Shown: in pieces, positions 30,848-30,958 of the stretch | How positions within the stretch are numbered: position 1 is the stretch's first letter | How the letters are laid out: every line of letters begins with the position of its first letter | Assembly: GCF_001194135.2 (NCBI RefSeq) | Contig: NC_069000.1 | Coordinates: forward strand, 12,623,333-12,657,537 | Source: Octopus bimaculoides | Taxonomy: Eukaryota | Direction of reading: 5' to 3' | Length of the DNA: 34,205 nt | The notes under the pieces: generated by a model | Told to the model about the DNA's origin: nothing | The model's input: the letters and a program-made list of their open reading frames with translations, nothing else | Database searches by the model: none | Made by a program: the position numbers and the translations under genes

Positions 30848-30958
30848 ATAACGTTGTAGTATATTGTCAACTTAATGTGACAATCCCCATAAGGGAGGCA
30901 GTAGTGTATTCCCTTATTGGGATTGTCACATTAAGTTGACAATATACTACAACGTTAT
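30848..30958. repeat. Near-perfect hairpin: 49-bp arms, 13-nt loop
   Basis: Left arm 30848-30896 ataacgttgtagtatattgtcaacttaatgtgacaatccccataaggga; the reverse complement of right arm 30910-30958 is identical except at one position (48/49). Loop ggcagtagtgtat. Confidence 0.95.

What the first reader, a model, noticed from the sequence alone, without database searches (positions are those of the whole stretch)
30848..30958. Near-perfect 49-bp hairpin whose arms each contain a second palindrome
Seen: 48/49-bp inverted arms with a 13-nt loop. Each arm contains ATTGTCA-N8-TGACAAT, so the element carries four TGTCA/TGACA half-sites and can fold either as one long stem or as two short hairpins. It is followed by cgcaccagtactgc and begins directly in the (TA)n next to a gap. 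Inference: such arm identity in a window where most repeats are decayed implies recent origin or active homogenisation. Candidate explanations are a palindromic non-autonomous transposon (MITE or Helitron-derived), a cruciform-forming site, or a hpRNA/endo-siRNA/miRNA precursor. Established: TGACA is the TALE-homeodomain (Meis/TGIF) core, so a dispersed family could also spread paired TF sites.
Basis: partly seen in the sequence, partly recalled or inferred. Interest (0 to 1): 0.7.

Follow-up and report, generated by a model that had tools for sequence, protein, structure and literature searches.

The report
Young short palindrome beside TA microsatellite
A 111-base, almost perfect DNA palindrome sits against a long TA repeat in a repeat-rich draft animal-like genome. 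It is most likely an ordinary young miniature transposon or a local inverted duplication, not a new kind of element.

Summary
Arms 30848-30896 and 30910-30958 are 48/49 complementary around a 13-nt loop, far beyond chance (RNA fold z = -16). The next best complex hairpin with a loop of 40 nt or less has a 14-bp stem. Each arm holds ATTGTCA-N8-TGACAAT, but that inner palindrome is only marginal (p about 0.03). TGACA/TGTCA is not enriched in the window.

The neighbouring gap is one of six gaps edged by (TA)n, so contigs break at TA tracts. A fold-back assembly error is therefore less likely, though not excluded.

I found two further, unrelated short palindromes inside contigs: 14374-14507 (arms 93%) and 22061-22287 (about 83%). 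Each also has one end within 5 bp of a microsatellite. The finding is therefore the youngest of a class, not a singular object.

There is no Rfam family membership, no second copy in the window and no vector match. All outside searches were blind to this host: its own SINE also gives nothing. Copy number, the key test, could not be measured.

Best reading: a young palindromic MITE-like element flanked by TA (0.4). The close rival is a template-switch inverted duplication at the TA tract (0.3). It is ordinary in kind and of low to moderate interest.

The parts
30402..30849 (.). (TA)n tract left of the palindrome. It comprises 30402-30428 TA repeat, 30429-30842 gap of 414 N, and 30843-30849 TATATAT at the contig start.
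   Evidence: Both gap edges are TA repeat. Six of the 10 gaps in the window have (TA)n at an edge, so this gap is an unresolved TA microsatellite.
30848..30896 (.). Left arm of the palindrome (49 nt): ATAACGTTGTAGTATATTGTCAACTTAATGTGACAATCCCCATAAGGGA
   Evidence: (I1).
30897..30909 (.). Non-palindromic 13-nt spacer or loop, GGCAGTAGTGTAT. It contains CAGTAGTG.
30910..30958 (.). Right arm (49 nt), the reverse complement of the left arm except T30918 opposite C30888.
   Evidence: I1; the mismatch was read.
30863..30884 (.). Inner palindrome ATTGTCA-N8-TGACAAT in the left arm. Its mirror copy lies at 30922-30943.
   Evidence: (D2). Chance probability is about 0.03. As a DNA hairpin it is only about -6 kcal/mol.
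30922..30943 (.). Mirror copy of the inner palindrome in the right arm.
30849..30957 (.). Possible mobile unit ACGTTGTAG...CTACAACGT (30851-30955) with a TA dinucleotide on each side (30849-30850 and 30956-30957).
   Evidence: Read. This fits a TA target-site duplication but is uninformative. TA is its own reverse complement, and the left TA belongs to the (TA)n tract.
30959..30972 (.). Unique right flank CGCACCAGTACTGC. It contains the 8-bp palindrome CAGTACTG (30964-30971), which matches CAGTAGTG in the loop at 7 of 8 positions.
   Evidence: The motif resemblance is post hoc, at p about 0.03 by my own count of alignments.
30974..30994 (.). Second, small hairpin TAAATCTCT-CTG-AGAGATTTA (9-bp stem).
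   Evidence: (DNA fold -5.8 kcal/mol, z = -3.35, 0 of 200 shuffles as good).
31003..31046 (.). Second, imperfect (TA)n tract, starting 45 bp right of the palindrome.
   Evidence: TA tracts occur about once per 840 bp in the window, so this spacing is unremarkable.
14374..14507 (.). Comparison element E2: an unrelated 134-bp palindrome with 46-nt arms (93% complementary) and a 42-nt spacer. Its right end is 3-4 nt from an (ATGT)n tract.
   Evidence: (z = -10.5).
22061..22287 (.). Comparison element E3: an unrelated 227-bp palindrome, about 83% self-complementary along its full length. Its left end is 5 nt from (TA)n(GA)n.
   Evidence: (z = -17.2).

Best explanation
It is a genuine, evolutionarily young, non-coding palindromic element of the miniature inverted-repeat (MITE or foldback) kind.

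- **Structure.** Two terminal inverted repeats of about 47-49 bp surround 13 bp of internal sequence, 105-111 bp in all.
- **Origin (inferred).** A cut-and-paste DNA transposase supplied from elsewhere in the genome inserted it at a TA dinucleotide, at the edge of a long (TA)n tract.
- **Function.** It has no function of its own.
- **Consequences (inferred).** Its single strands fold into a very stable 49-bp hairpin, which is shown. The locus is therefore prone to cruciform or hairpin formation during replication. Any transcript through it, on either strand, would carry a 49-bp perfect dsRNA stem that Dicer or ADAR could act on. Mobility, transcription and processing are not shown.
For: - **Anatomy.** Long near-identical terminal inverted repeats, a tiny non-palindromic spacer, 111 bp, and no ORF or coding signal.
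- **Precedent.** This is the architecture of palindromic MITEs such as Made1: 80 bp, two 37-bp TIRs and 6 bp between them (PMC1784062).
- **Flanks.** A TA dinucleotide lies on both sides.
- **Position.** It sits at a (TA)n tract. Only about 1% of window positions lie within 5 bp of a TA-tract edge. TA microsatellites are known preferred targets of several DNA transposon families: MuTAnT, TAFT and Micron (PMC4486113).
- **Class.** Two more short palindromes of the same size class, with older arms (93% and about 83%), lie inside contigs. Such elements are therefore a real, recurrent component of this genome, at about one per 10 kb, a density typical of MITEs rather than of rare local mutations (my estimate).
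- **Against an artefact.** There is a non-palindromic 13-nt loop and a C/T arm mismatch. The left arm continues into TATAT, not into the reverse complement of the right flank. Contigs break at (TA)n throughout the window.
- **Not vector or phage DNA**.
Against: - **No second copy.** None was found in the 34-kb window at up to 3 mismatches or by sensitive blastn or in any collection searched. The outside searches are blind to this host, however. Its own multi-copy SINE also gives nothing (against two window copies).
- **Uninformative TSD.** The TA target-site duplication carries no weight here.
- **Termini.** They do not recall a standard superfamily signature (from memory, not tested).
- **One-sided microsatellites.** The microsatellite adjoins only one side of this and of the other two palindromes. 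MuTAnT, a microsatellite-targeting element, carries TA repeats on both flanks.
- **No clear TSD** for the two older palindromes.
- **No shared sequence** among the three palindromes.
Confidence: 0.4

Rival explanations
1. An inverted duplication made in place by a replication template switch at the TA microsatellite. A fork stalls at the hairpin-prone (TA)n tract. The nascent strand folds back or jumps strand, copies about 49 nt in reverse complement, and returns to the original template through TA microhomology. One mutation thus creates a perfect hairpin from local unique DNA.
For: - It is single-copy in everything that could be searched.
- The arms are near-perfect.
- The outer boundary of the repeat coincides with the self-complementary (TA)n tract on one side only.
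- Three unrelated palindromes each have just one end within 5 bp of a microsatellite of a different type. The chance is about 0.07 each, or about 4e-4 jointly (post hoc). They share no sequence and have no clear TSDs. A mutational process at microsatellites explains this without further assumptions.
- Template switching is documented to create whole hairpins in one event. The cited screen used stems of 30-55 bases as its criterion (PMC10710096; PMC5453318).
Against: - By my rough estimate from the primate figures, three such palindromes in 32 kb is far denser than template-switch hairpins are known to be.
- The 227-bp element, with arms of about 108 bp, is long for this mechanism.
- No ancestral state is available, so no switch points can be inferred.
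Confidence: 0.3
2. A fold-back assembly or library artefact. The genome has only one arm, and the left arm was added at the contig end from chimeric hairpin reads or during gap closing.
For: - The palindrome starts 5 bases from a contig end beside a 414-N gap.
- This assembly does contain gap-edge artefacts: a perfect 75-nt direct duplication flanks the 10-N gap at 27679-27688.
Against: - The contig end is explained by the TA tract: six of 10 gaps have (TA)n at an edge.
- The loop is 13 nt and not palindromic, and the arms differ at one base.
- A fold-back would continue leftwards as the reverse complement of CGCACCAG..., but the sequence there is TATAT.
- No other contig end shows a fold-back.
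- Comparable palindromes with diverged arms lie inside contigs.
Confidence: 0.1
3. A hairpin RNA gene (miRNA, hpRNA or endo-siRNA precursor, or an ADAR substrate) maintained by selection for pairing.
For: - The hairpin is very stable on both strands.
- Palindromic MITEs and template-switch hairpins are known raw material for miRNA genes (PMC1784062; PMC10710096).
Against: - There is no Rfam family at gathering score. The sub-threshold hits are structure-driven and occur on both strands.
- A 49-bp mismatch-free stem is not canonical pre-miRNA geometry (my knowledge).
- Near-perfect arms are what youth alone predicts.
- There is no evidence of transcription and no conservation data.
Confidence: 0.07
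4. A microsatellite-tailed retroposon: a stem-loop followed by a simple-repeat tail, copied by a LINE reverse transcriptase that recognises 3' stem-loops and repeat tails.
For: - On one strand each of the three palindromes is followed within 0-5 nt by a simple repeat.
- The window's SINE copies also end in a small stem-loop followed by (TA)n or (TG)n. Two of them sit tail to tail around a microsatellite.
Against: - The stems are 46-108 bp, far longer than known LINE or SINE 3' recognition hairpins (my knowledge).
- There is no promoter-bearing head.
- No target-site duplications are visible.
Confidence: 0.05
5. A dispersed carrier of paired TALE-homeodomain (Meis/TGIF) binding sites.
For: There are four TGTCA/TGACA pentamers in 111 bp.
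Against: - The four sites are one 7-bp inner repeat seen twice by mirror symmetry, with chance p about 0.03.
- The pentamers are not enriched in the window, at 61 observed against 68 expected.
- No dispersed family has been shown.
Confidence: 0.02

Closest known systems
Made1 (the mariner-derived human MITE that gave rise to hsa-mir-548)
   Same: It is a near-perfect palindrome made almost wholly of two long terminal inverted repeats (37 bp each) around a few internal bases (6 bp). It forms a stable hairpin when transcribed from either strand (PMC1784062). Here there are two arms of about 49 bp around 13 bp.
   Different: There is no sequence similarity. No family, autonomous partner or small RNA has been shown here, and the arms are longer.
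TA-microsatellite-targeting DNA transposons (MuTAnT in Medicago, TAFT in maize, Micron in rice)
   Same: They are short non-autonomous DNA elements found embedded in (TA)n tracts (PMC4486113).
   Different: MuTAnT carries TA repeats on both flanks. Here the tract adjoins only the left end, and the next TA tract starts 45 bp to the right. These are plant families, and the host here looks like an animal genome.
Hairpins created by template-switch mutations (Loytynoja and Goldman; Monttinen et al.)
   Same: A single event yields a perfect inverted repeat of tens of bases with a short loop from local DNA. That study screened for stems of 30-55 bases (PMC10710096; PMC5453318).
   Different: Membership needs the ancestral sequence and inferred switch points, which are not available here.
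Palindromic AT-rich repeats and other cruciform-prone palindromes (my knowledge)
   Same: They are short-spacer palindromes associated with AT-rich repeats, prone to secondary structure and instability.
   Different: Those palindromes are several hundred bp long and AT-rich throughout. This one is 111 bp of complex sequence (36% G+C) lying beside, not within, the TA repeat.

Membership tests
MITE (miniature inverted-repeat transposable element) | Terminal inverted repeats | tested here: met
   The arms are 49 nt and 98% complementary.
MITE (miniature inverted-repeat transposable element) | Small size and no coding capacity | tested here: met
   The element is 111 bp. Its longest internal ORFs are 20-31 aa, and its six-frame peptides have no homologue.
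MITE (miniature inverted-repeat transposable element) | Target-site duplication flanking the repeats | tested here: inconclusive
   TA lies on both sides (30849-30850 and 30956-30957). TA is self-complementary and the left one belongs to the (TA)n tract, so it carries no weight.
MITE (miniature inverted-repeat transposable element) | Many dispersed copies with different flanks | not testable with these tools
   There is one copy in the 34-kb window. No host genome is searchable. The collections that were searched also lack the host's own SINE, so their silence says nothing.
MITE (miniature inverted-repeat transposable element) | Related autonomous element sharing the termini | not testable with these tools
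   There is no transposase-like ORF in the window, and no repeat library or host genome is at hand.
Microsatellite-targeting transposon (Micron, MuTAnT or TAFT type) | Microsatellite repeats directly on both flanks of the insertion | tested here: not met
   The left flank is (TA)n. The right flank is TAT followed by unique CGCACCAG..., and the next TA tract starts 45 bp away. The criterion is met only if the unit is taken as 30848-31002, which then has no terminal inverted repeats.
Helitron-derived element | 5'-TC and CTRR-3' termini with a subterminal 3' hairpin, inserted between A and T | tested here: not met
   The boundaries read ATAACG... and ...CGTTAT on both strands. The extended unit ends ...ATGATATT. 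Neither has TC or CTRR ends.
Known microRNA precursor family (Rfam) | Score at or above the family's gathering threshold | tested here: not met
   There are no hits at gathering score. The best sub-threshold hits are MIR6217 at 54.8 against 110, mir-7131 at 54.7 against 74 (on both strands), and mir-4788 at 35.7 against 91.
microRNA or hpRNA gene in general | Transcription and precise small-RNA products | not testable with these tools
   No expression data are available.
Template-switch mutation product | Ancestral sequence lacking the inverted copy, with switch points that explain the change | not testable with these tools
   No orthologous or ancestral sequence is available.

The most novel reading that the evidence does not exclude
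In this microsatellite-dense genome, stalled replication at simple repeats regularly creates short perfect palindromes from the adjoining unique DNA. The three unrelated palindromes in this window, each touching a microsatellite on one side only, would be products of different ages. Such a process would continually seed new hairpin RNAs (miRNA, siRNA or ADAR substrates). That would be of special interest if the host is a cephalopod, as the SINE sequence suggests to me from memory (unverified).
Probability: 0.2. Interest if true: 0.5.

Novelty: new member of a known kind. Interest (0 to 1): 0.25.

Why it matters
**As a single locus it matters little.** It is a young, structure-prone palindrome in non-coding, repeat-rich DNA.

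**What is useful:**
- The hairpin should not be called a miRNA, a Helitron or a transcription-factor site carrier on present evidence.
- The gap next to it is an unresolved TA microsatellite, and the fold-back worry can be settled with spanning reads.
- All three short palindromes in the window touch a microsatellite on one side. A genome-wide count would show whether this reflects insertion preference, microsatellite birth at element ends, or template switching at repeats. That is a modest but testable question about how hairpin-forming DNA arises.

Tried and rejected
- **Second copies in the window.** The core 22-mer and the terminal 20-mer, each at up to 3 mismatches, match only the two arms. 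Word-7 blastn and Smith-Waterman gave only chance-level hits. The 13-mer at 33904 and the arm-like stretch at 31137 (score 18 against a background maximum of 26) were dismissed.
- **Outside DNA searches.** The core 22-mer and the terminal 19-mer gave 0 hits in the metagenome, prokaryote-genome and viral collections.
- **Blindness control.** The host SINE, present at least twice in the window, also gives 0 in the viral contigs and 0 as a peptide. These collections are therefore blind to this genome.
- **Protein route.**
  - The six-frame peptides of the element gave 0 hits.
  - The concatenated complex ORFs of the window gave 0 hits.
  - Pfam scans of 10 ORFs gave nothing above the curated cut-offs.
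  - Four window ORFs are not on record in the contig index.
  - The host could therefore not be identified by any tool.
- **Host guess.** My recollection that the SINE resembles an octopus SINE is unverified. Sequence-string searches of the literature found nothing.
- **Vector, adapter or phage origin.** There was no blastn match in plasmids or phages. From memory it matches no loxP, FRT, transposon-end or sequencing-adapter hairpin.
- **Rfam.** There was nothing at gathering score. The whole-window E-value scan gave only microsatellite-driven sub-threshold miRNA hits.
- **tRNA scan.** No tRNA genes were found.
- **Relatedness of the three palindromes.** None was found.
- **Viral origins.** A parvovirus-like terminal hairpin and a CRESS-virus-like origin loop were considered and dropped. 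The side hairpins are weak, the loop holds no nonanucleotide motif (my reading), and there is no viral match.

Full report
**What is there**

- The window is 34,205 bases of AT-rich DNA (about 33% G+C) broken by ten runs of N.
- About 9% of its bases lie in perfect microsatellites, and it has 38 pure (TA)n tracts of six or more units.
- It has no tRNA, no Rfam family at gathering score and no recognisable coding sequence.
- It looks like intergenic or intronic DNA of a draft short-read eukaryote assembly.
- The host could not be named with the tools. From memory, a tRNA-derived-looking SINE at 24559-24738 and 25445-25624 resembles an octopus SINE. That is only a lead.

- Arms 30848-30896 and 30910-30958 are 49 nt long and 48/49 complementary. 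They surround the 13-nt spacer GGCAGTAGTGTAT.
- The one mismatch is C30888 opposite T30918.
- Either strand folds into one long stem: RNA -80.7 and -78.4 kcal/mol (z = -16 and -14), DNA -50.8 kcal/mol (z = -18).
- Among hairpins with loops of 40 nt or less, the next best complex stem in the window is 14 bp.
- The arms each contain ATTGTCA-N8-TGACAAT. The flank CGCACCAGTACTGC follows, and the element starts inside TATATAT at a contig start.

**What is less than it seems**

- The inner palindrome is a single 7-bp inverted repeat. It reaches p = 0.03 in 20,000 shuffles of the arm. Its second copy and the 'four half-sites' follow from mirror symmetry.
- The alternative fold into two short hairpins is worth about -6 kcal/mol per arm, against -51 for the long stem.
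- TGACA/TGTCA pentamers are at expectation in the window, 61 against 68.
- The Rfam E-value hits to long-hairpin miRNA models occur on both strands and fall far below threshold, so they reflect pairing and not homology.

**The gap**

- Six of the ten gaps have (TA)n at an edge, and this one has it on both edges. The contig ends here because the assembler could not cross a TA microsatellite.
- The non-palindromic loop and the arm mismatch argue against a fold-back artefact. So does the fact that the left arm continues into TATAT and not into the reverse complement of the right flank.
- The artefact is not excluded. The assembly does have a gap-edge artefact elsewhere: a perfect 75-nt duplication around the 10-N gap at 27679-27688.

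**New context**

- A sensitive reverse-strand self-comparison found two further short palindromes, both inside contigs:
  - E2 at 14374-14507: 134 bp, 46-nt arms, 93% complementary, 42-nt spacer.
  - E3 at 22061-22287: 227 bp, about 83% self-complementary over its full length.
- It also found a tail-to-tail pair of SINE fragments.
- E2, E3 and the finding share no sequence.
- Each has exactly one end within 5 bp of a microsatellite: (TA)n, (ATGT)n and (TA)n(GA)n respectively. The chance is about 0.07 per element, or about 4e-4 for all three. This is post hoc and rests on three cases.
- The finding is therefore the youngest member of a class of short palindromes in this genome, not a singular object.

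**Searches for relatives**

- There is no second copy in the window.
- Nothing turned up in the metagenome, prokaryote-genome, viral, plasmid or phage collections, in the protein collection, or in the literature.
- These negatives carry no weight for copy number. The host's own SINE, present at least twice in the window, is equally invisible to them.

**Explanation**

*Young palindromic MITE (0.4).* I favour a young palindromic MITE inserted at a TA dinucleotide.
- The architecture is that of Made1-type elements (PMC1784062).
- TA lies on both sides, and TA tracts are known transposon targets (PMC4486113).
- A density of about one short palindrome per 10 kb fits MITEs.

*Template-switch inverted duplication (0.3).* The close rival is an inverted duplication made in place at the TA tract (PMC10710096, PMC5453318).
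- It explains more simply the one-sided microsatellites, the lack of clear target-site duplications and the lack of shared sequence among the three palindromes.
- It is disfavoured by the density and by the arms of about 108 bp in E3.

*Other readings.*
- An artefact: about 0.1.
- A selected hairpin RNA gene as the primary identity: about 0.07.
- A microsatellite-tailed retroposon: about 0.05.
- A transcription-factor site carrier: about 0.02.

*Shown and inferred.*
- Shown: the sequence anatomy, its statistical strength and the fold.
- Inferred: mobility, origin, transcription and any processing.

**Verdict**

The feature is real and well described. It is ordinary in kind: a new member of a known kind. 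One BLAST against the host genome and one orthologous alignment would settle what it is.

Noticed in passing
window 14374-14507: Unrelated 134-bp palindrome (46-nt arms, 93% complementary, 42-nt spacer). Its right end runs into an (ATGT)n tract, and weak pairing extends into the flanks.
   Followed up: partly
window 22061-22287: Unrelated 227-bp full-length palindrome (about 83% self-complementary, DNA fold -78 kcal/mol, z = -17). Its left end is 5 nt from a (TA)n(GA)n tract, and it has no clear target-site duplication.
   Followed up: partly
window 14374-14507, 22061-22287, 30848-30958: All three short palindromes have exactly one end within 5 bp of a microsatellite, each of a different repeat type. 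Joint chance is about 4e-4, post hoc. The cause is unknown: insertion preference, repeat birth at element ends, or template switching.
   Followed up: partly
window 27604-27763: A perfect 75-nt direct duplication (27604-27678 = 27689-27763) flanks a 10-N gap. It is almost certainly an uncollapsed contig overlap, that is, an assembly artefact.
   Followed up: yes
window 24559-24738, 25367-25450, 25445-25624: Copies of a tRNA-derived-looking SINE, 80-84% alike. Their 3' ends have a small stem-loop and run into (TA)n or (TG)n. Two fragments sit tail to tail around a microsatellite. From memory it resembles an octopus SINE; this is unverified.
   Followed up: partly
window 7952-8755: Four copies of a unit of about 117 nt at spacings of 181-289 bp, 62-79% alike (D19). 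Not characterised.
   Followed up: no
window 20592-20716 and 21755-21879: A pair of 125-nt direct repeats, 86% identical and 1.16 kb apart (D20). Not characterised.
   Followed up: no
window 30900-30907 and 30964-30971: The loop motif CAGTAGTG and the 8-bp palindrome CAGTACTG in the right flank match at 7 of 8 positions. Each lies a few bases 3' of an arm. It is post hoc (p about 0.03) and unexplained.
   Followed up: partly
window 30974-30994: Small 9-bp-stem hairpin TAAATCTCT-CTG-AGAGATTTA between the palindrome and the next TA tract (z = -3.35).
   Followed up: partly
whole window: Microsatellite load is very high: 99 merged perfect tracts of 12 bp or more, 9% of bases, and one (TA) tract of six or more units per about 840 bp. 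Most gaps sit at simple repeats. CpG observed/expected is 0.95.
   Followed up: yes
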